A DNA stretch of 64,000 nt, taken from the IMG/VR virus record IMGVR_UViG_3300042386_001233, positions 124,001 to 188,000 of that record; one strand, 5' to 3'. Both the position numbers and the translations under genes were made by a program. Below, one piece after another: positions 32,357 through 48,988 of this stretch. The notes under the pieces were generated by a model that saw only the letters and a list, made by a program, of their open reading frames with translations, did not search any database and was not told where the DNA came from. Position 1 is the first letter of the stretch. Each line of letters opens with the position of its first letter.

Positions 32357-33514
32357 TCACCCGATACAAAATTTATCACTAATCTTAGACGCTAGTTCTT
32401 TAGCAGCATTAGAAAGAAACCTGTTGTTGCTAAAGTAGAGGGGTGTTGAGACTTGATTAAGGAACTCCACGACCGTTTTTAAAAGCTTGGTCTGGGAACC
32501 GTCAAGATCTAAATCTTCGCCCCCAGCGTCAACAGGAAGCGGCTCAATAGCATCTGTATCGTCCTCAGTAACAGGAGATACTGGAGTAGGATCACCATAA
32601 GCCTTGTTGAACATACCATGACCAGAATAGACATACTTTGTCTTGATATCTTCTGTGCTGTTGGTATATGTGTTAAGGTTTAAAGACTTCATCTGATTTG
32701 CAATAGTTGTAGCAACATTAATTGCAACTGGAACTCCAGTGATGTCAGACTTTTTATAAGCCTTGGCATATTCTTTAAACCATTCGTCGCTAGTCTTATT
32801 AGCAACAATATTAACAACAGCAGAAACTCCATCAAGAGCCTCTTTAAGTTGTTCAATATTTATCGGATTACCAGTTGATCCAGACAAAATACTGGTAAAA
32901 TAAGGTTGCTTTCCTTCCCAACCCTTCCTCCACCAAGTATAAGGGATTCTGTAAATCTGATTGATTTTGATAGCTCGGGCATCACCACCAAAATGATTTA
33001 CCAGTTTCTTTTGAATACCATTCCAATAAGTCTTATGAGGACTATTAGTATTTGGGTTTAGAATCCAATAGCACTGATAACCATTACGAGTATCAACAAC
33101 CCAGCTTGGCTTTACTGGAAAGTTATTGATATAATTCAAGAATCCCCTTTTCTTCTGCATTACGACACTGGGCTTAAAATAGTTACCGTTATCATCTCGT
33201 CCAGCATCCATATCAACAAAACAAGCACGAATTCTACTAATAGCATATTGTTTACGTCCACCATTAACGTAGAAATAAGCATCAGCACCTTGGTTATCAT
33301 TTGCAATAGCAACGGTGGTGAGATGATCTGTATGATTCATGCTACTGATCTTCTTGCGAGGATCACCATTGTAACAGAAAATCTGCTGACCACCAAAAGA
33401 CTCAAAAAACTTATTCCTCAAAGTAATCTGATCTCTTGTTCCAATAGCACTATGAGTCTTATCAAACGGATTAAAAGCCAAAGTATCGCTAAACATTTGT
33501 TTTCCTTTTTCCAC
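32357..33514 (-). CDS. RepB'-type (AEP superfamily) DNA primase-like protein
   Basis: AYFYVN, RACFVDMD (DxD), PSWVVDTRNGYQCYW, FGGD, YRIP. Confidence 0.75.
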   Translation of the reverse strand: MEKGKQMFSDTLAFNPFDKTHSAIGTRDQITLRNKFFESFGGQQIFCYNGDPRKKISSMNHTDHLTTVAIANDNQGADAYFYVNGGRKQYAISRIRACFVDMDAGRDDNGNYFKPSVVMQKKRGFLNYINNFPVKPSWVVDTRNGYQCYWILNPNTNSPHKTYWNGIQKKLVNHFGGDARAIKINQIYRIPYTWWRKGWEGKQPYFTSILSGSTGNPINIEQLKEALDGVSAVVNIVANKTSDEWFKEYAKAYKKSDITGVPVAINVATTIANQMKSLNLNTYTNSTEDIKTKYVYSGHGMFNKAYGDPTPVSPVTEDDTDAIEPLPVDAGGEDLDLDGSQTKLLKTVVEFLNQVSTPLYFSNNRFLSNAAKELASKISDKFCIG

Positions 33515-33575
33515 TTCCTACCTACATTTTTGATATTGGGATAGTAAACACTACCATCAAAAGCAATATCGTAAA

Positions 33576-33655
33576 AGATGGTAACGGAATCGAACCGTTA
33601 TTGTAGGATAGTAAAAACTATATAGGTACTATCTTACAAGTTCCAAACACCACCT
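33576..33655 (-). ncRNA. tRNA-like / tmRNA-TLD-like structured RNA (80 nt)
   Basis: Acceptor AGGUGGU/ACCAUCU with G3.U70; T-arm AACGG-UUCGAUU-CCGUU; stemless 9-nt D region; 12-bp helix with one mismatch in place of the anticodon arm. Confidence 0.65.
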
Positions 33656-33658
33656 TGA

Positions 33659-34234
33659 CTATTTACTAACTCCATATTTATTCTTGAGACTTTCCATTGT
33701 TCTATTAATTTTCACTTCGCTTTTTTTGGTAAATTTATCACTATCAGATAGTTCATAATGCAACTCTCTATGACATCTATTACAAAGCAGTTTACACTTT
33801 TTTATTTCTTGTAACAGTTTTTCAAAATTTGTATTAATTTCTCCTATCGCATACTCTTTGATCGCAGGATCTAAATGATGAAAATCTAATGCCGATTGAC
33901 ACTTATTGTATCCACATTTTTCACATCTGTTGCCCAGTTGTTCTATTAGAATTTTTTTCTTTGCTATTTTAATGATTTTGTTAGCGCATTTACTACAAGT
34001 TTTCATTGAGCTTTTTTTATCACAAATTTCACAGTTGGTTATACCTAATGCTTTTCTGTTTGTTTTATCGTGTGGTCTTAAGTTTTTAGTTAAGTACCCT
34101 AGTCGTTTTTTAGCCTCATGAATAGATGATTTAGAACATCCATATAATTCGGCTAACTCATACGAGGTTTTACCTTCAAGTATATGCTGCTTGAATCTTT
34201 TCTTATCCTTGATAATTTCTTTAATAGTCATCAT
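33659..34234 (-). CDS. HNH homing endonuclease with N-terminal HTH
   Basis: ELAELYGCSKSSI HTH; CEKCGY...ALDFHHLDP..K...KCKLLCNRCHRELH. Confidence 0.88.
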   Translation of the reverse strand: MMTIKEIIKDKKRFKQHILEGKTSYELAELYGCSKSSIHEAKKRLGYLTKNLRPHDKTNRKALGITNCEICDKKSSMKTCSKCANKIIKIAKKKILIEQLGNRCEKCGYNKCQSALDFHHLDPAIKEYAIGEINTNFEKLLQEIKKCKLLCNRCHRELHYELSDSDKFTKKSEVKINRTMESLKNKYGVSK

Positions 34235-34301
34235 AAACCCCCGGAGAATGAAAGTATACCTTTTAATACACCTTTCAAACTCCGAGGGCATGATTTATTT
34301 T

Positions 34302-35171
34302 TTAGAAATTATCCTCATCCTCTTCATCGTCAAAATCGTCCTCATAATCATCTTCGTCAGAATCGTCAAATTGAGACCAATAATCTTCATCGGTCAAGTG
34401 ATCATCATTATCTTCGTCATCATTATCATCATAGCTAAAATTTTCCGAATACAGAGGCTTAAGTAATTCTCCTGCATATTCAGCAACAACTTCATATCGA
34501 CAAGTACGAAGTTTTTCATAATTGCAATCACTTGGGACACTGACTACATCTTTCGGGTTAATCTTGACGATCACAATTCGATCTCCATTCTCAAGACTAC
34601 CATACCCAGCAACATAGTTTAAAGCCCCGGCATGAAGTCCATTTGAACAACCCCTACCTCTATCGTCATCAACTTTAGATCGTGTCATTTCGCAAACCTT
34701 ACCAACACTATTGTCGAAAACACCACGATACTTATCCTTAAAATCTGAACGAACAGCTTTATAGGCCAAAAAATATCCATCGGAAGTTACAGCCAAATTC
34801 TCATGTTCCAAGAAATCATACAGTTCCTTCTGACTCTGCATACTTGGATTTTCCATGAGATTATTCAGGAAATTAACAAGGGGCTGAAACGGCAATCCCT
34901 TGCTCATAAACTCCAGAATACGCTTACTAATACTACCATGAACTTCCTCACCCTCGTAGAGAACCTGACCGTTCTTGATCTCCACAAGACCATCGCTAAA
35001 AGTAGCAACAGCCTTTTGAACATCAACAACTTCCAAGAGTTCCTCTGCCGTAGCAGTAGGAAGTCTTTCCAGAATCAACTTATAGTTGATATGATCCGGC
35101 AACACCTGATAACTCTGGTTGTTAAGAACCAGCGTCAAATTACCATCCACAAACATAAACGGAACAGCCAT
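34302..35171 (-). CDS. rIIB: T4 rIIB-like protein
   Basis: DGYFLAYKAV..D, VDDDR..GCS.GLH, IVKINPKDVVSVP.D...KLRTCRYEVV; acidic tail. Confidence 0.85.
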   Translation of the reverse strand: MAVPFMFVDGNLTLVLNNQSYQVLPDHINYKLILERLPTATAEELLEVVDVQKAVATFSDGLVEIKNGQVLYEGEEVHGSISKRILEFMSKGLPFQPLVNFLNNLMENPSMQSQKELYDFLEHENLAVTSDGYFLAYKAVRSDFKDKYRGVFDNSVGKVCEMTRSKVDDDRGRGCSNGLHAGALNYVAGYGSLENGDRIVIVKINPKDVVSVPSDCNYEKLRTCRYEVVAEYAGELLKPLYSENFSYDDNDDEDNDDHLTDEDYWSQFDDSDEDDYEDDFDDEEDEDNF

Positions 35172-35266: not shown

Positions 35267-37951
35267 CTACTTGATCAAACTACTCAACTGAATCTTAAAA
35301 AGGTCAATATTCTCCTGACTCATCTGCTCAATCCAATCCTTGCTAGACTTTCCATAATAGGAACTACGATCTTCAAGAATAGGATTCTGACTAGGCTTTA
35401 GGTCTGTCAGATTGCCGCTAACTTGATGAGTTCCCATCATATATTTCAGCATAGGATTCTTGTCTACTTCAGCCTTAATCTTCTCCCTAATTTCAGAGAT
35501 TTTCCATCTCTTAAGATCTTCAGTAGAAGTTCCACGAATAATCTTGAGATAACCCTCTGCCTTGTCTTGATTAGTCACAGAATACAAACGAGTGACAATC
35601 ATGTTTGTCAAGGTGTTATAGGCCAAATTAGCATTACGAATCTCTTTACTATCAACATCTTCAATCCCAGCCTCTTTCATAAGCTTAGAAATATGAGAAA
35701 GATATTCTGTTTGACTGAACTTAGTGATATTAAAAGGATGAATATGAACAGTATTAGCAAAGAACTCTGTTAGCATTGTTTTGTTCAAGCAATCAACAAG
35801 AGTCTTATTGCCAATAAACTTATCATAATCCAATCCAAAGATACTCAGAACATGAAACATAAACTGCTTATCGGTTGTTCCATACTGGCAATATCTATAG
35901 CCGCCAGTAGTCTTTTCTTCAGTTGCAAAATCTTTCTTGCAATATTCAACAAGCTTGTTGATAGAAGCAAGATTCTTAAAGTGCTTGTTAGCAACAACTT
36001 TAAGTTGACGCTTCAAGAAATCATTGAAGTTAACAAGATTATATCCGTCTTTCTCAAGCTTTTTAGCAAAAGCTGTTTTGATAGCATAAACCTTACTATC
36101 TCCAACCAAGTCCTTGACTATACTCTTGAGTTTATCATCACTAAGAGTAATAGCGATGTCATTAATCTCAGGATAACCAGACTCAGGCTCAGTCTTATAA
36201 CGAAGCATAGGAACATACACAATCTCATCCTGTTCCAGAAAATCCTCTAGTTGTTCTTCTGAAAGAATTCTGAGACAAGTAGCATCATTATAAGGATTAG
36301 TAATCTGCTTACTGTCCTTATCATAACCGTGGATAAAGAATACATCTTGATCACTAACACTACCATTAGAATTTCTATTGTAAGACTTTCTTGGGCCAGA
36401 ACTTTGTGTCAGATGTTTATAGTCTGAAACCTTGAGCAGATTTCCAGCCCCAACATCTTCGATCAGTTGATCAAAACCTTCTCCGCTTTTTGTATGATCC
36501 TTAGTGTCGATCATCAGATAAGCAAAGCAATCGTTTGCATTACAATATCTTGTAAGAATTTTCTTGGCACTTTCTTCACTAGCAACGTCGCAGACAAAGA
36601 AAGCCATCGTTCCCTTCTTTTTCTGATTATTCCAGTAATAGGAACCTTTACCAGTAAGAGTTTCATGATGGATTCTGTCTGTCAGAGCAACTTGGCGGCG
36701 AGAACGATAGCCAGCAGTCTTGTAATTAAAAACGTACAGACTCTTACCGGCAGGAATTTTATATTCCAAGTCATTGCCAGAGTTGATAGGATGATCTTTA
36801 CCCTTGGGATCAGTCCAAGTAGCACCAACACCCCAGCCGCCAGCCAATTCATTCATAGCATAGTATGAAGTAATTGCTTCTACCTTGTTTTGGGCAGCTT
36901 GAATTTTCTTGGAGAATTCTTCCTTCATCTCCATGTAAATTTCTTGAGTCTTTTTACGCAGTGTCTTGATAACATCTTTAGTATACTGCAAACCTTCACG
37001 GCTAACATCCATTTCCAGTTCACCGATACCAAAATCAAGCTCAAGATAAAGGCCGGAGTTCAGAATCTCTCCAACGAAACTCTTCCAAGAATCAATATCT
37101 GCTTTCTGGAAAGCCCTATTCCACTTCTGAATATGATCGGGCATCTCATCCTTCTCTTGACCAACAATCTGTGCGGTCTGAACAGGATAAGCGATATTGC
37201 CCATGATAGCTACGATACCACTATCAATTCGATGATAACCATTAGGGAAATAACTATTATCATTATTAAGTCGGCATACCCTCCAACCTTCACCACTAAT
37301 GATGATGTTGGTATTACTATACTTATGATCTTGCAGATTATTTCCGATACCACCTTCAAGGATGGGTTTCATGCGGAAATAGTGGAAGATTCTCTTAGCC
37401 TTGTCGGTAAACTCTTGGAAATCATGCTGCTTAACAGCGAAACTAATTTCAAGACCATTAGGCTCAGACGTATCTGAAGTATTGAAAAGATTCAGAGTAG
37501 GCACTCCGCTCTCGTCAATCGCAGCAATATAGGTATACTTCTTACCGTTGTAATATGATGCCGTGGTGAAACTCTTGGTATACGCGAAGGGACTCTTAGA
37601 CCCTAGACCAAGACAACCAACAAAATCATTACTATCATTCTTGTTGGACGCACCATAAGTTGTATACAAGTCCTCCATATCGGCCTGACTAAGACCAGTG
37701 CCATAATCTCTGACTACGAAGGTAGGATTGGCAGCGGTAGGCAAAGTCACCTTAAAGGGATTCTTATTCCCGGCAGAGATATGACTATCATAAGCATTAG
37801 TAGAAAGCTCACGAATCGCAGCCATAACCTTATCAGAGTAAAGAGAGTCTGAAAGGATTTTAAACATTTTGCTCGTCTGAGCAATATTGAACTGATTCCT
37901 GCTTGCAACTCCAACGCTGTGAGTCTCAATCGTCCTATCTGCCAACTTCAT
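35267..37951 (-). CDS. rIIA: T4 rIIA-like protein (GHKL ATPase N-terminus)
   Basis: FKILSDSLYSDK.AAIRELSTNAYDSH, RDYGTGLS, YGASNK, GCLGLGSKSPFAYT, SREGLQY; directly upstream of rIIB. Confidence 0.88.
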   Translation of the reverse strand: MKLADRTIETHSVGVASRNQFNIAQTSKMFKILSDSLYSDKVMAAIRELSTNAYDSHISAGNKNPFKVTLPTAANPTFVVRDYGTGLSQADMEDLYTTYGASNKNDSNDFVGCLGLGSKSPFAYTKSFTTASYYNGKKYTYIAAIDESGVPTLNLFNTSDTSEPNGLEISFAVKQHDFQEFTDKAKRIFHYFRMKPILEGGIGNNLQDHKYSNTNIIISGEGWRVCRLNNDNSYFPNGYHRIDSGIVAIMGNIAYPVQTAQIVGQEKDEMPDHIQKWNRAFQKADIDSWKSFVGEILNSGLYLELDFGIGELEMDVSREGLQYTKDVIKTLRKKTQEIYMEMKEEFSKKIQAAQNKVEAITSYYAMNELAGGWGVGATWTDPKGKDHPINSGNDLEYKIPAGKSLYVFNYKTAGYRSRRQVALTDRIHHETLTGKGSYYWNNQKKKGTMAFFVCDVASEESAKKILTRYCNANDCFAYLMIDTKDHTKSGEGFDQLIEDVGAGNLLKVSDYKHLTQSSGPRKSYNRNSNGSVSDQDVFFIHGYDKDSKQITNPYNDATCLRILSEEQLEDFLEQDEIVYVPMLRYKTEPESGYPEINDIAITLSDDKLKSIVKDLVGDSKVYAIKTAFAKKLEKDGYNLVNFNDFLKRQLKVVANKHFKNLASINKLVEYCKKDFATEEKTTGGYRYCQYGTTDKQFMFHVLSIFGLDYDKFIGNKTLVDCLNKTMLTEFFANTVHIHPFNITKFSQTEYLSHISKLMKEAGIEDVDSKEIRNANLAYNTLTNMIVTRLYSVTNQDKAEGYLKIIRGTSTEDLKRWKISEIREKIKAEVDKNPMLKYMMGTHQVSGNLTDLKPSQNPILEDRSSYYGKSSKDWIEQMSQENIDLFKIQLSSLIK

Positions 37952-40853: not shown

Positions 40854-41128
40854 TAGGAGCGGTGAGAATCGAACTCACACTGGATGGATTTTCTTGCCAC
40901 TATAGTTTTCACTACCATTTCTGTTTGTGGTCTGGACTTTATCTTAACCATAACTTTCGTTTTAGGTTCCTGCCGTCAAGTCTCTACACCTTCATAATAT
41001 TTCTATTAAGCTTGGCTCGGTATTAGCAGTTAAGCCTCCACCGAATTTGACAGGTTCTACATCAAAGATTTCTCTTTAAGCACTCAAATTGTATAAGTCC
41101 ATTGTCTCTGCCGTTGGACTACGCTCCC
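40854..41128 (-). tRNA. trnL: tRNA-Leu(UAA) interrupted by a group I intron
   Basis: Exon1 GGGAGCGUAGUCCAACGGCAGAGACAAUGGACUU (41128-41095) + exon2 AAAAUCCAUCCAGUGUGAGUUCGAUUCUCACCGCUCCUA (40892-40854); spliced loop CUUAAAA. Confidence 0.9.
40893..41094 (-). mobile_element. self-splicing group I intron (tRNA-Leu UAA type), 202 nt, no ORF
   Basis: Inserted after U34; IGS GAGU pairs with ACUU; P AAAUUCGGUG, Q AAUACCGAGCCAA, R GUGUAGAGACUUGACGG, S AAGAUAAAGUCC; terminal G. Confidence 0.9.
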
Positions 41129-48345: not shown

Positions 48346-48354
48346 AATATTAAG

Positions 48355-48707
48355 TGGACGATTGGGGAATCGAACCCCGTCCAGTATAAACGTCTATATA
48401 AACTTCTACATTGTTAGTTACTTGTTATCACACAAATAACAAAGCTATCAGAATTATCTGAGTCAGATTGAGTACAATCATCATTCCTATTTATGTCTGG
48501 TAGGACTACCATATCCGAATATCGGAGTCAGCATGATTTGGTAATAAGGCTCATGCCGCCCCACTCATTACCTAATTAATTAGGCAGCGAGAGCGAGAGT
48601 TGAAACTTCGCCAATTAACATTTTTAATCGACTTTTATACTGGCCGGTCGATCAACCAGTCAATGCAATTTATATTTCTTTTTACCTGTCGATACCAGGA
48701 ATCGCCC
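48355..48707 (-). ncRNA. ssrA: tmRNA; tag peptide (A)GEVSTLALAA* at 48612-48580
   Basis: 5' GGGCGAUUCCUGGUAUCGAC and 3' GGACGGGGUUCGAUUCCCCAAUCGUCCA; G3.U70, A73; PK1-like region; UUAAUU before resume codon GGC; tag ends LAA-UAA. Confidence 0.93.
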
Positions 48708-48891: not shown

Positions 48892-48912
48892 CAGAATCCT
48901 TCCTGTTTAAAG

Positions 48913-48988
48913 TAGGGCGAGTTGGAGTCGAACCAACCTATGAACACCTTATAAGAGTGTCGGATGCAACCGGCTTACCTTCCGCCCC
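48913..48988 (-). tRNA. trnI: tRNA-Ile(UAU)
   Basis: GGGGCGG/UCGCCCU acceptor, anticodon arm ACACU-CUUAUAA-GGUGU, T-arm GUUGG-UUCGACU-CCAAC, A73. Confidence 0.85.

What the first reader, a model, noticed from the sequence alone, without database searches (positions are those of the whole stretch)
33576..33655. 80-nt tRNA mimic shaped like a tmRNA tRNA-like domain with no message
Seen (minus strand): AGGUGGU-GUUUGGAAC-UUGUAAGAUAGU-(15-nt loop)-ACUAUCCUACAA-U-AACGG-UUCGAUU-CCGUU-ACCAUCU. It has a 7-8 bp acceptor with G3.U70, a perfect T-arm, a stemless D loop containing GG and a 12-bp helix instead of an anticodon arm. The discriminator is U and no CCA is encoded. Known: this topology is that of the tmRNA TLD, and G3.U70 is the Ala identity element. 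It starts 3 nt after the HNH stop and lies before the primase gene. Inference: an SmpB/EF-Tu decoy, a decoy for anticodon nucleases, or an RNase P/Z processing signal.
Basis: partly seen in the sequence, partly recalled or inferred. Interest (0 to 1): 0.7.

Follow-up and report, generated by a model that had tools for sequence, protein, structure and literature searches.

The report
Conserved tRNA-like RNA upstream of primase
An 80-base stretch between two phage genes folds like a tRNA without an anticodon, is preserved by compensating mutations in about 150 related uncultured lake phages, and most likely acts as a cutting signal for the host's tRNA-processing enzymes rather than as a tmRNA-like decoy.

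Summary
There is a 7-bp acceptor stem with G3.U70, a GG-containing D region, a 12-bp helix with a 15-nt loop, a canonical T arm, discriminator U and no CCA.

It is not a decayed tRNA. All 147 related viral loci with enough upstream sequence carry a T-loop element at this junction. In a structural alignment 15 of 24 pairs show compensatory changes. The element is 93-98% identical where the adjacent primase DNA is only 69-75% identical.

Across the family only the tRNA "top half" is constant: acceptor stem, mini D hairpin with GG, T arm and a U-rich trailer. The anticodon-position helix can be 12 bp, 6 bp, absent or replaced by a second T arm. G3.U70 occurs in only about 40% of variants. ARAGORN and Rfam call neither a tRNA nor a tmRNA here.

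The ancestral position is the rIIB-to-primase junction; the HNH gene is a recent insertion. Some distant primase relatives have real tRNAs or a promoter at this place.

Best reading, untested: a tRNA-derived punctuation signal for RNase P and RNase Z, like plant mitochondrial t-elements. A second covarying hairpin (33532-33570) belongs to the primase leader. No Rfam family matches, and RNA evidence is too thin to show transcript ends.

The parts
33576..33655 (-). tRNA-like element (TLS), type A: acceptor stem, mini D hairpin, 12-bp helix with 15-nt loop, T arm
   Evidence: Read from the sequence. Covariance model R1 scores it 113 bits, and it is the only copy in the 90-kb contig. Covariation is shown.
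33649..33655 (-). Acceptor 5' strand AGGUGGU (G3 of G3.U70 at 33653)
   Evidence: Pairs with 33576-33582. Among 40 distinct sequences the 3:70 pair is G.U 32, G-C 5 and A-U 3.
33640..33648 (-). D-region GUUUGGAAC: possible 3-bp hairpin GUU/AAC with a UGG loop
   Evidence: GG is invariant. Equivalent mini hairpins with other sequences occur in types C, D and F.
33601..33639 (-). 12-bp helix (33628-33639 with 33601-33612, one A.C mismatch) closed by a 15-nt loop (33613-33627) carrying the conserved CUA..UAGUU motif
   Evidence: 8 of 12 pairs show changes on both sides across the family. The loop is nearly invariant in type A. The motif recurs in types B, C, D and in the distant L218.
33583..33599 (-). 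T arm AACGG-UUCGAUU-CCGUU
   Evidence: 4 of 5 stem pairs covary and 99.5% of cells are paired. A T-loop motif is present in 147 of 147 loci.
33571..33582 (-). Acceptor 3' strand ACCAUCU, discriminator U (33575) and U-rich trailer; no CCA
   Evidence: The discriminator is U in 59 of 64 distinct variants.
33656..33662 (-). Semi-conserved 5' leader AUAGUCA (contains the HNH stop codon in this window)
   Evidence: The same leader precedes the element in types A, B and C, where the upstream gene is rIIB.
33532..33570 (-). Hairpin 2: two-tier stem (GAUAUUG/CAAUAUC outer, GAUGGUAG/CUAUC inner) in the primase leader
   Evidence: RNAalifold on 29 sequences gives 15 pairs, 11 with compensatory changes, and many G.U pairs on the sense strand. 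It is absent where the primase is absent (L117).
32357..33496 (-). AEP-type (RepB'/PrimPol-like) primase gene; true start is the conserved AUG at 33496
   Evidence: PHROG hit is weak. Atlas neighbours are RepB_primase/PriCT. The AF2 model's best PDB hits are 6zp9 and 3h25. The start codon is conserved in relatives.
33659..34291 (-). HNH homing endonuclease gene, inserted between rIIB and the element in this clade only
   Evidence: PHROG HNH families, E 7e-20. Relatives have rIIB directly upstream.
34302..35171 (-). rIIB gene, the ancestral upstream neighbour
   Evidence: phrog_609, E 3e-72; synteny.

Best explanation
The element is a tRNA-derived, tRNA-shaped RNA module sitting in the polycistronic early transcript at the rIIB-to-primase junction.

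It keeps only what tRNA end-processing enzymes read: a 7-bp acceptor stem stacked on a 5-bp T stem, a canonical T loop that can dock a GG-containing D loop, and a U-rich 3' trailer without CCA.

Proposed mechanism (inferred, not shown):
1. Host RNase P cuts at the 5' end of the acceptor stem, near 33655/33656. This ends the upstream rIIB (here HNH) message.
2. RNase Z, or RNase E plus exonucleases, cuts after the discriminator, near 33575.
3. That second cut creates a primase mRNA whose new 5' end lies a few bases before hairpin 2. Hairpin 2 would then act as a 5' stabiliser or operator.
4. An ~80-nt tRNA-like by-product is released and may receive CCA.

This is the logic of plant mitochondrial t-elements, applied to a phage operon.
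For: Shown:
- A conserved structure with covariation. 95.6% of cells are paired, and 15 of 24 pairs change on both sides, against 2-5 in slid controls. Within type A alone, 5 pairs do so.
- There is one copy per genome, always in the same orientation as the flanking genes, at the same junction. 147 of 147 loci carry the T-loop 71-117 nt before the primase AUG.
- The element is far more conserved than the neighbouring coding DNA: 93-98% against 69-75%.
- The invariant parts are the acceptor stem, D/T elbow, T arm and U trailer. The anticodon-position domain ranges from a 12-bp helix to nothing to a second T arm.
- No convincing promoter lies between the upstream gene and the primase.
- A distant primase homologue that is not downstream of rIIB has a near-consensus TTGACA-17-TACAAT promoter and no element.
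- Two other distant homologues have genuine tRNA genes at the same place: tRNA-Ile in L221 and tRNA-Arg in L224. In L079 and L224 a real tRNA also follows the primase gene.
- In L117 the element persists after rIIB although hairpin 2 and the primase are absent. It is therefore a junction module, not a primase-specific operator.
- The phage's own tRNAs and tmRNA also lack an encoded CCA, so the host must mature CCA-less tRNA 3' ends.

Precedent: t-elements are cut by RNase P/Z, CCA-tailed and base-modified, but not aminoacylated (PMC1920247, PMC11658184).
Against: - No transcript ends could be observed. The three lake metatranscriptomes hold only single short contigs. One of them bridges the rIIB 3' end into the element, which shows at most that an unprocessed form exists.
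- A bare cleavage signal does not explain the nearly invariant 15-nt loop or the CUA..UAGUU motif, which is shared by types A-D and by the distant L218.
- Connectors between the acceptor stem and the D hairpin are 0-1 nt instead of 2, and the acceptor or T stem can be drawn one pair longer. Recognition by RNase P/Z is therefore plausible but not guaranteed.
- The host and its RNase set are unknown.
Confidence: 0.45

Rival explanations
1. Trans-acting tRNA mimic. After release the element accumulates as a stable small RNA, receives CCA, and titrates or misleads a factor that reads the tRNA acceptor end or elbow. Candidates are a host defence toxin acting on tRNA 3' ends, AlaRS, EF-Tu or SmpB. 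The conserved loop would be a second binding site.
For: - Loop nucleotides are conserved as strongly as stems in type A.
- The CUA..UAGUU motif persists across types and in the distant L218.
- G3.U70 is kept in 21 of 23 type-A variants.
- T4's species 1 RNA (rnaC), a stable tRNA-like RNA, has a comparable 3' half: a long helix followed by a T arm. It is the best hit of model R1 in the T4 tRNA cluster.
Against: - G3.U70 is absent in about 60% of distinct variants, and the discriminator is U.
- The long helix and loop are missing in types D and F.
- The fixed position at one operon junction, instead of in a tRNA cluster, fits a cis role better.
- No SmpB or CCA-adding enzyme gene is on the 90-kb contig, although the contig is only about 65% complete.
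- The D region lacks the UCGAC motif that the phage's own tmRNA carries at that position.
Confidence: 0.17
2. Cis-regulatory leader. The tRNA-like fold, together with hairpin 2, binds a protein or uncharged tRNA-handling factor and so controls translation or stability of the downstream message without being cut out.
For: - The leader is long and conserved in full: the element, hairpin 2, then a purine-rich stretch with two SD-like motifs.
- The rIIB stop codon lies only 7-15 nt before the acceptor stem, so a terminating ribosome would melt it. This would couple folding to upstream translation (inference).
Against: - L117 keeps the element in front of a different gene, without hairpin 2.
- L218 keeps the element without hairpin 2. 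The two parts are therefore separable.
- No complementarity to the ribosome-binding site was found on inspection.
Confidence: 0.15
3. 3'-end module of the rIIA-rIIB message. The acceptor stem followed by UUUU acts as a leaky intrinsic terminator, as a barrier to 3' exonucleases, or as both. This would give the upstream mRNA a tRNA-like 3' end.
For: - The element always follows rIIB closely in relatives, also in L117 and L218.
- A U-run follows the stem in most variants.
- The scan flags the T arm plus tail as terminator-like.
Against: - The U tract has only 4-5 residues, and the closing stem encloses a multi-branch structure, unlike typical terminators.
- In the window an HNH gene separates rIIB from the element, yet the element and its 5' leader are intact.
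- A canonical T loop and a GG D loop are not needed for termination.
Confidence: 0.1
4. DNA-level signal. The folded sense strand, especially hairpin 2, is a single-strand initiation site or origin recognised by the adjacent RepB'-like primase.
For: - The primase model resembles RepB' (3h25). RepB' is known to recognise DNA hairpins (my knowledge).
- Hairpin 2 travels with the primase gene.
Against: - T-loop and GG D-loop features are RNA-tertiary hallmarks.
- Many G.U pairs would be weak G.T pairs in DNA.
- There is no GC-skew inflection at 33.5 kb.
- The element exists without the primase in L117.
Confidence: 0.05
5. Decaying tRNA pseudogene with no function.
For: ARAGORN does not call it, and Rfam's tRNA model gives 14 bits against a threshold of 29.
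Against: - It is present in 147 of 147 loci.
- It shows compensatory changes.
- It is 93-98% identical across phages whose primase DNA is about 72% identical.
Confidence: 0.02

Closest known systems
Plant mitochondrial t-elements (and the tRNA-like element upstream of Haloferax 5S rRNA)
   Same: Both are tRNA-derived, non-decoding cloverleaf-like structures that sit directly next to mRNA ends. Both lack an encoded CCA. Their role is to be cut by RNase P and RNase Z so that neighbouring transcripts get defined ends (PMC1920247, PMC11658184).
   Different: This element is found in a DNA phage operon. The anticodon-position domain is remodelled much more strongly (12-bp helix, none, or a second T arm), and the D arm is reduced to a 3-4-bp hairpin with a UGG loop. 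Cleavage has not been shown here.
tmRNA tRNA-like domain (RF00023)
   Same: The topology is shared: open acceptor stem, GG-containing D region, T arm, and a long helix where the anticodon arm would be. The window's copy has G3.U70. The phage also carries a real tmRNA without an encoded CCA.
   Different: There is no mRNA-like domain and no tag reading frame conserved across types. The D region has no UCGAC, and the discriminator is U. G3.U70 is not conserved, and the helix is dispensable. The Rfam tmRNA model does not match.
Phage T4 species 1 RNA (rnaC)
   Same: It is a phage-encoded, non-decoding stable RNA with a canonical T arm preceded by a long helix, and an imperfect acceptor-like stem. 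It is the best R1 hit in the T4 tRNA cluster, ahead of the true tRNAs. A homing endonuclease gene (segB) also sits next to that cluster.
   Different: The hit scores only 15 bits, so homology is not shown. rnaC is 139 nt with a large extra 5' hairpin, and it lies in a tRNA cluster, not at an mRNA junction. Its function is unknown (my knowledge).
Canonical tRNA (RF00005)
   Same: It shares the acceptor stem, the T arm with a UUCGAUU loop, and GG in the D region. Distant relatives have real tRNA genes at the equivalent position.
   Different: There is no 7-nt anticodon loop and no 5-bp anticodon stem. It scores 14 bits against a gathering score of 29, and ARAGORN is negative for all variants.
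mascRNA-type tRNA-like RNAs cut out of long transcripts (MALAT1) and viral 3' tRNA-like structures
   Same: These are tRNA mimics embedded in a longer transcript and recognised by tRNA enzymes (my knowledge; review PMC5723415).
   Different: They are eukaryotic or RNA-virus systems with different architectures, and there is no homology.

Membership tests
tRNA (RF00005) | Reaches the Rfam gathering score or is called by a tRNA finder | tested here: not met
   Rfam gives 14.1 bits against 29, and with a shifted acceptor. ARAGORN is silent on the window element and on all variants tested.
tRNA (RF00005) | 5-bp anticodon stem with a 7-nt loop carrying an anticodon | tested here: not met
   The window has a 12-bp helix with a 15-nt loop. 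In types D and F the domain is absent.
tRNA (RF00005) | 7-bp acceptor stem stacked on a 5-bp T stem, with a canonical T loop and GG in the D loop | tested here: met
   The T-loop motif is present in 147 of 147 loci.
tmRNA (RF00023) | Match to the family covariance model | tested here: not met
   There is no tmRNA hit at 33576-33655 even at E <= 10. The same model finds the real tmRNA at 48352-48707 with 77 bits.
tmRNA (RF00023) | G3.U70 alanine identity pair, conserved | tested here: not met
   The pair is present in the window, but only in 25 of 64 distinct variants. A-U and G-C variants occur even within type A.
tmRNA (RF00023) | mRNA-like domain with a resume codon and a tag ending in ..LAA | tested here: not met
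   The loop has only 15 nt. The short frames after UAGUU are not conserved between types (read). The real tmRNA encodes GEVSTLALAA*.
tmRNA (RF00023) | D-loop sequence GG..UCGAC and SmpB binding | tested here: not met
   The sequence motif is absent in the window element (GUUUGGAAC), whereas the phage tmRNA has CUGGUAUCGAC. The binding half of this feature could not be tested: the complex predictor did not fold RNA-protein jobs.
t-element-like processing signal (functional class) | Non-decoding tRNA-like fold directly flanking mRNA ends, in the sense orientation | tested here: met
   The element lies 3 nt after the upstream stop codon (7-15 nt in relatives) and about 80 nt before the primase AUG, on the same strand.
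t-element-like processing signal (functional class) | Derived from a tRNA gene | tested here: inconclusive
   Distant primase homologues have real tRNAs at the equivalent place. No cellular genome holds the 22-nt 3' half exactly, and no donor tRNA was identified.
t-element-like processing signal (functional class) | Cleavage by RNase P at the 5' side and by RNase Z at the 3' side | not testable with these tools
   The metatranscriptome contigs are too sparse to show ends.

The most novel reading that the evidence does not exclude
The module may be more than a cleavage signal. Once cut out, it could be CCA-tailed and persist as a phage-made 'top-half tRNA' acting in trans. It might serve as a sponge or decoy for host factors or defence toxins that attack or read the tRNA acceptor end or elbow. 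In the G3.U70 types it might be an alanine-accepting RNA. The conserved CUA..UAGUU loop would be a second, specific docking or dimerisation site. The many architectures (49 to about 130 nt, one or two T arms) would then reflect an arms race.
Probability: 0.15. Interest if true: 0.85.

Novelty: new variant of a known kind. Interest (0 to 1): 0.6.

Why it matters
tRNA-shaped cutting signals inside messenger RNAs are textbook for organelles and for a few eukaryotic transcripts, but they are hardly documented in phages. Here a whole uncultured lineage of large freshwater rII-bearing phages keeps such a module at one operon junction.

It comes in at least six interchangeable architectures that share only the part of a tRNA read by RNase P, RNase Z and the CCA-adding enzyme. 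This amounts to a natural deletion series for what those enzymes need.

If processing is confirmed, it would show that phages use host tRNA maturation to punctuate early operons and set the level of a replication enzyme. It would also add a new family to RNA databases; Rfam 15 has no match.

If the element acts in trans instead, it would be a new kind of phage tRNA mimic.

Tried and rejected
1. Nucleotide search of cultured phages found no match. Protein searches found no close cultured relative of the primase, and rIIA matches cultured phages at under 60% identity only.
2. Pfam on the neighbouring genes gave nothing at E <= 0.001. The primase had to be identified by PHROG, atlas neighbours and fold search. 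A profile search of PDB sequences was empty.
3. I tested a mini-ORF or tag reading after UAGUU by eye across types. It is not conserved: type A would give FTILQ*, while types B, D and L015 run on. Rejected.
4. A promoter inside the element (TTGGAA-18-TATAGT, 9 of 12 matches) was rejected, because spacing and hexamers are not kept in the other types. A T4 MotA-box-like TGCTT in hairpin 2 was also rejected: the stem covaries as RNA and no MotA gene is on the contig (where the control was also silent).
5. Homing-endonuclease hot spot: only the window clade has an inserted HNH gene. The varied 5' flanks elsewhere are just variable rIIB tails.
6. RNA evidence: both sequencing-run runs and both read-laying runs yielded single contigs only.
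7. Complex prediction with RNase Z and the element was not folded, so it gives no evidence either way.
8. No exact 22-nt match exists in 185,579 cellular genomes, so no donor tRNA or host clue came from that.
9. GC skew shows no origin-like switch.

Full report
**Observation**

On the minus strand of the window the described element is present exactly at 33576-33655. It has these parts:
- a 7-bp acceptor stem, AGGUGGU/ACCAUCU, with G3.U70;
- a 9-nt D region with GG;
- a 12-bp helix with one A.C mismatch, closed by a 15-nt loop;
- one linker U;
- a perfect T arm with the loop UUCGAUU;
- discriminator U, then UUUA, and no CCA.

It begins 3 nt after the stop codon of an HNH endonuclease gene (33659-34291). 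It lies 79 nt before the conserved AUG (33496) of the next gene. The sequence folds better than 199 of 200 shuffles. ARAGORN does not call it. Rfam gives only a sub-threshold tRNA match of 14 bits against 29, and no tmRNA match.

**Context**

The window is part of a 90-kb IMG/VR viral contig with no close cultured relative. The genes around the element are all on the minus strand:
- rIIA (35267-37951);
- rIIB (34302-35171);
- the HNH gene;
- the element;
- a 379-aa protein.

The 379-aa protein has no Pfam hit. Its atlas neighbours are RepB_primase/PriCT. The best PDB matches of its AF2 model are the AEP domain of cyanophage S-2L PrimPol and RepB'. The model's mean pLDDT is only 56, so this is a moderate-confidence assignment as an AEP-type primase.

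**Conservation**

Searching viral contigs with the primase gave 80 loci, plus 80 more around a divergent member. The 24-nt 3' part of the element is exact in 55 contigs.

Every one of the 147 loci with at least 200 nt upstream of the primase has a canonical T-loop motif 71-117 nt before the start codon. About 4 such matches would be expected by chance.

A covariance model built from 23 distinct type-A sequences finds exactly one copy per genome. On that alignment 5 pairs change on both sides. On the model-guided alignment of 40 distinct sequences of types A-E:
- 95.6% of cells are paired;
- 15 of 24 pairs have compensatory changes, against 2-5 for slid controls;
- 4 of 5 T-stem pairs and 8 of 12 long-helix pairs covary.

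One caveat applies: this alignment is fitted to the structure. However, independent MFE folds of the other types give the same cloverleaf-like layout.

The element is 93-98% identical in phages whose primase DNA is only 69-75% identical to the window's. It is therefore a functional RNA structure and not a decaying tRNA.

**What is constant and what is not**

Relatives carry strikingly different versions:
- Type A is the window's type.
- Type B has another 12-bp helix.
- Type C has a D arm AGUC-UGGU-GACU, a 6-bp helix and a large loop.
- Type D has a D hairpin CCGC-UGG-GCGG and a 13-nt single-stranded linker, with no helix.
- Type F has about 50 nt: acceptor stem, D arm and T arm only.
- Type G and L081 have two T arms.

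The constant parts are the acceptor stem, a tiny D hairpin with GG, the T arm, a U discriminator (59 of 64) and a U-rich trailer.

G3.U70 is not constant. Among 64 distinct cores the 3:70 pair is G.U in 25, A-U in 13, G-C in 12, U-A in 8 and a mismatch in 6 (the register was assigned automatically, so the numbers are approximate). Even within type A, natural A-U and G-C variants exist.

The features that persist are those read by RNase P, RNase Z and the CCA-adding enzyme (established knowledge of tRNA processing). The features that would make a tmRNA-like or alanine-accepting RNA, or an anticodon-nuclease target, do not persist.

**Position**

In all relatives examined the upstream gene is rIIB, whose stop codon lies 7-15 nt before the element. 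Only the window's clade has the HNH gene wedged in, and it leaves the element and its short AUAGUCA leader intact.

Downstream, a second structure (33532-33570) shows 11 of 15 pairs with compensatory changes and many sense-strand G.U pairs.

The two modules are separable:
- L218, a distant relative with rIIA-rIIB-element-primase, has the element but no hairpin 2.
- L117 has rIIA-rIIB-element followed by other genes. It has no hairpin 2 and no primase.

Hairpin 2 therefore belongs to the primase leader, and the element belongs to the junction.

Among more distant primase homologues:
- One that is not downstream of rIIB has a near-consensus sigma-70-type promoter and no element.
- Several are tightly packed against the upstream gene, with no element.
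- Two have genuine tRNA genes at the equivalent place. In L224 and L079 a real tRNA also follows the primase.

No significant promoter signal lies between the upstream gene and the primase in the window.

**Interpretation**

These data fit best with a tRNA-derived punctuation signal. RNase P and RNase Z (or RNase E) would excise the element. This would end the upstream message and create the 5' end of a primase mRNA that starts just before hairpin 2. Plant mitochondrial t-elements work this way (PMC1920247); they are also CCA-tailed and base-modified but not charged (PMC11658184).

The steps that are shown are structure, selection, position and modularity. The cleavages are inferred.

The main unexplained observation is the near-invariant loop. 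Its CUA..UAGUU motif is partly palindromic: CUAUAUAG in the window, CUAAUUAG in L015, CUAUAG in L218 and CUAG in types C and D. It recurs across types. This keeps alive a trans-acting or protein-binding role.

Transcript data do not help. Three lake metatranscriptomes hold only single contigs (33402-33552, and 33586-33667 continuing into a relative's rIIB), with no information on ends.

**Comparison with known systems**

The element is not a tRNA and not a tmRNA by their models and defining features (see the membership table).
- Topologically it resembles a tmRNA tRNA-like domain.
- Functionally it most resembles t-elements.
- Among phage RNAs it resembles T4 species 1 RNA, whose 3' half (long helix plus T arm) is the top hit of the model in the T4 tRNA cluster. 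That hit scores only 15 bits.

No Rfam 15 family matches. A 2023 catalogue of IMG/VR structured-RNA candidates mentions tRNA-like motifs in general, but nothing tied to a primase (PMC10690425).

**Verdict**

This is a real, strongly selected and structurally plastic tRNA-like module, new as a family. Its probable function is of a known kind. Interest is 0.6. Confidence in the processing-signal mechanism is about 0.45.

Noticed in passing
window 48352-48707 (-): The phage encodes a full tmRNA: Rfam 77 bits, G3.U70, discriminator A, no encoded CCA. The tag reading frame gives GEVSTLALAA*. No SmpB gene was found on the 90-kb contig.
   Followed up: partly
window 40854-41128 (-): A tRNA-Leu(UAA) gene is split in its anticodon loop by a group I intron (Rfam hit 40911-41104). 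This is the arrangement classic for cyanobacteria and plastids. ARAGORN misses it. Relatives L107 and L124 carry the intron-less tRNA-Leu(taa) with the same exon sequence.
   Followed up: partly
window 33532-33570 (-): A second conserved two-tier hairpin lies in the primase leader, with 11 of 15 pairs covarying and an invariant UGAU...AUCCC core. It travels with the primase gene, not with the tRNA-like element. It could be a 5' stabiliser, a translational operator or a primase recognition site.
   Followed up: partly
window 33613-33627 (-); L218:1412-1422: The loop motif CUA(N0-2)UAGUU, partly palindromic, is conserved across element types A-D and in a distant relative. No explanation was found.
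   Followed up: partly
window 33659-34291 (-): The HNH endonuclease gene is present only in the window's clade (L002-L008), inserted between rIIB and the element. Its stop codon reuses the conserved AUAGUCA leader.
   Followed up: yes
L081:3786-3916; L143:2318-2432: Some relatives carry a doubled element: one acceptor stem encloses two D-like hairpins and two canonical T arms. Their D regions read GGUGAC..UUCGAC, reminiscent of the tmRNA D loop.
   Followed up: partly
L224:1379-1451 and 2419-2489; L221:199-271; L079:5162-5234: In distant or related phages the primase gene is bracketed by genuine tRNA genes: tRNA-Arg and tRNA-Lys in L224, tRNA-Ile upstream in L221, and tRNA-Gly downstream in L079. 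L117 lacks the whole hairpin 2-primase-tRNA-Gly segment between the element and the next genes. This suggests a cassette bounded by tRNA-like sequences.
   Followed up: partly
L215:1409-1547 (phage T4 rnaC): T4 species 1 RNA folds with a canonical T arm preceded by a 10-bp helix. It scores higher with the element's model than T4's own tRNAs do (15 bits against 12.4 or less).
   Followed up: partly
window 48912-48988 (-): tRNA-Ile with anticodon UAU. Like tRNA-Leu and the tmRNA, it ends ..A-C-UU without an encoded CCA.
   Followed up: no
window 34302-35171 (-) and relatives: rIIB proteins end in a highly acidic, length-variable tail (..DEDEDEDY..DDQY*). Its last codons differ between otherwise close phages.
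   Followed up: no
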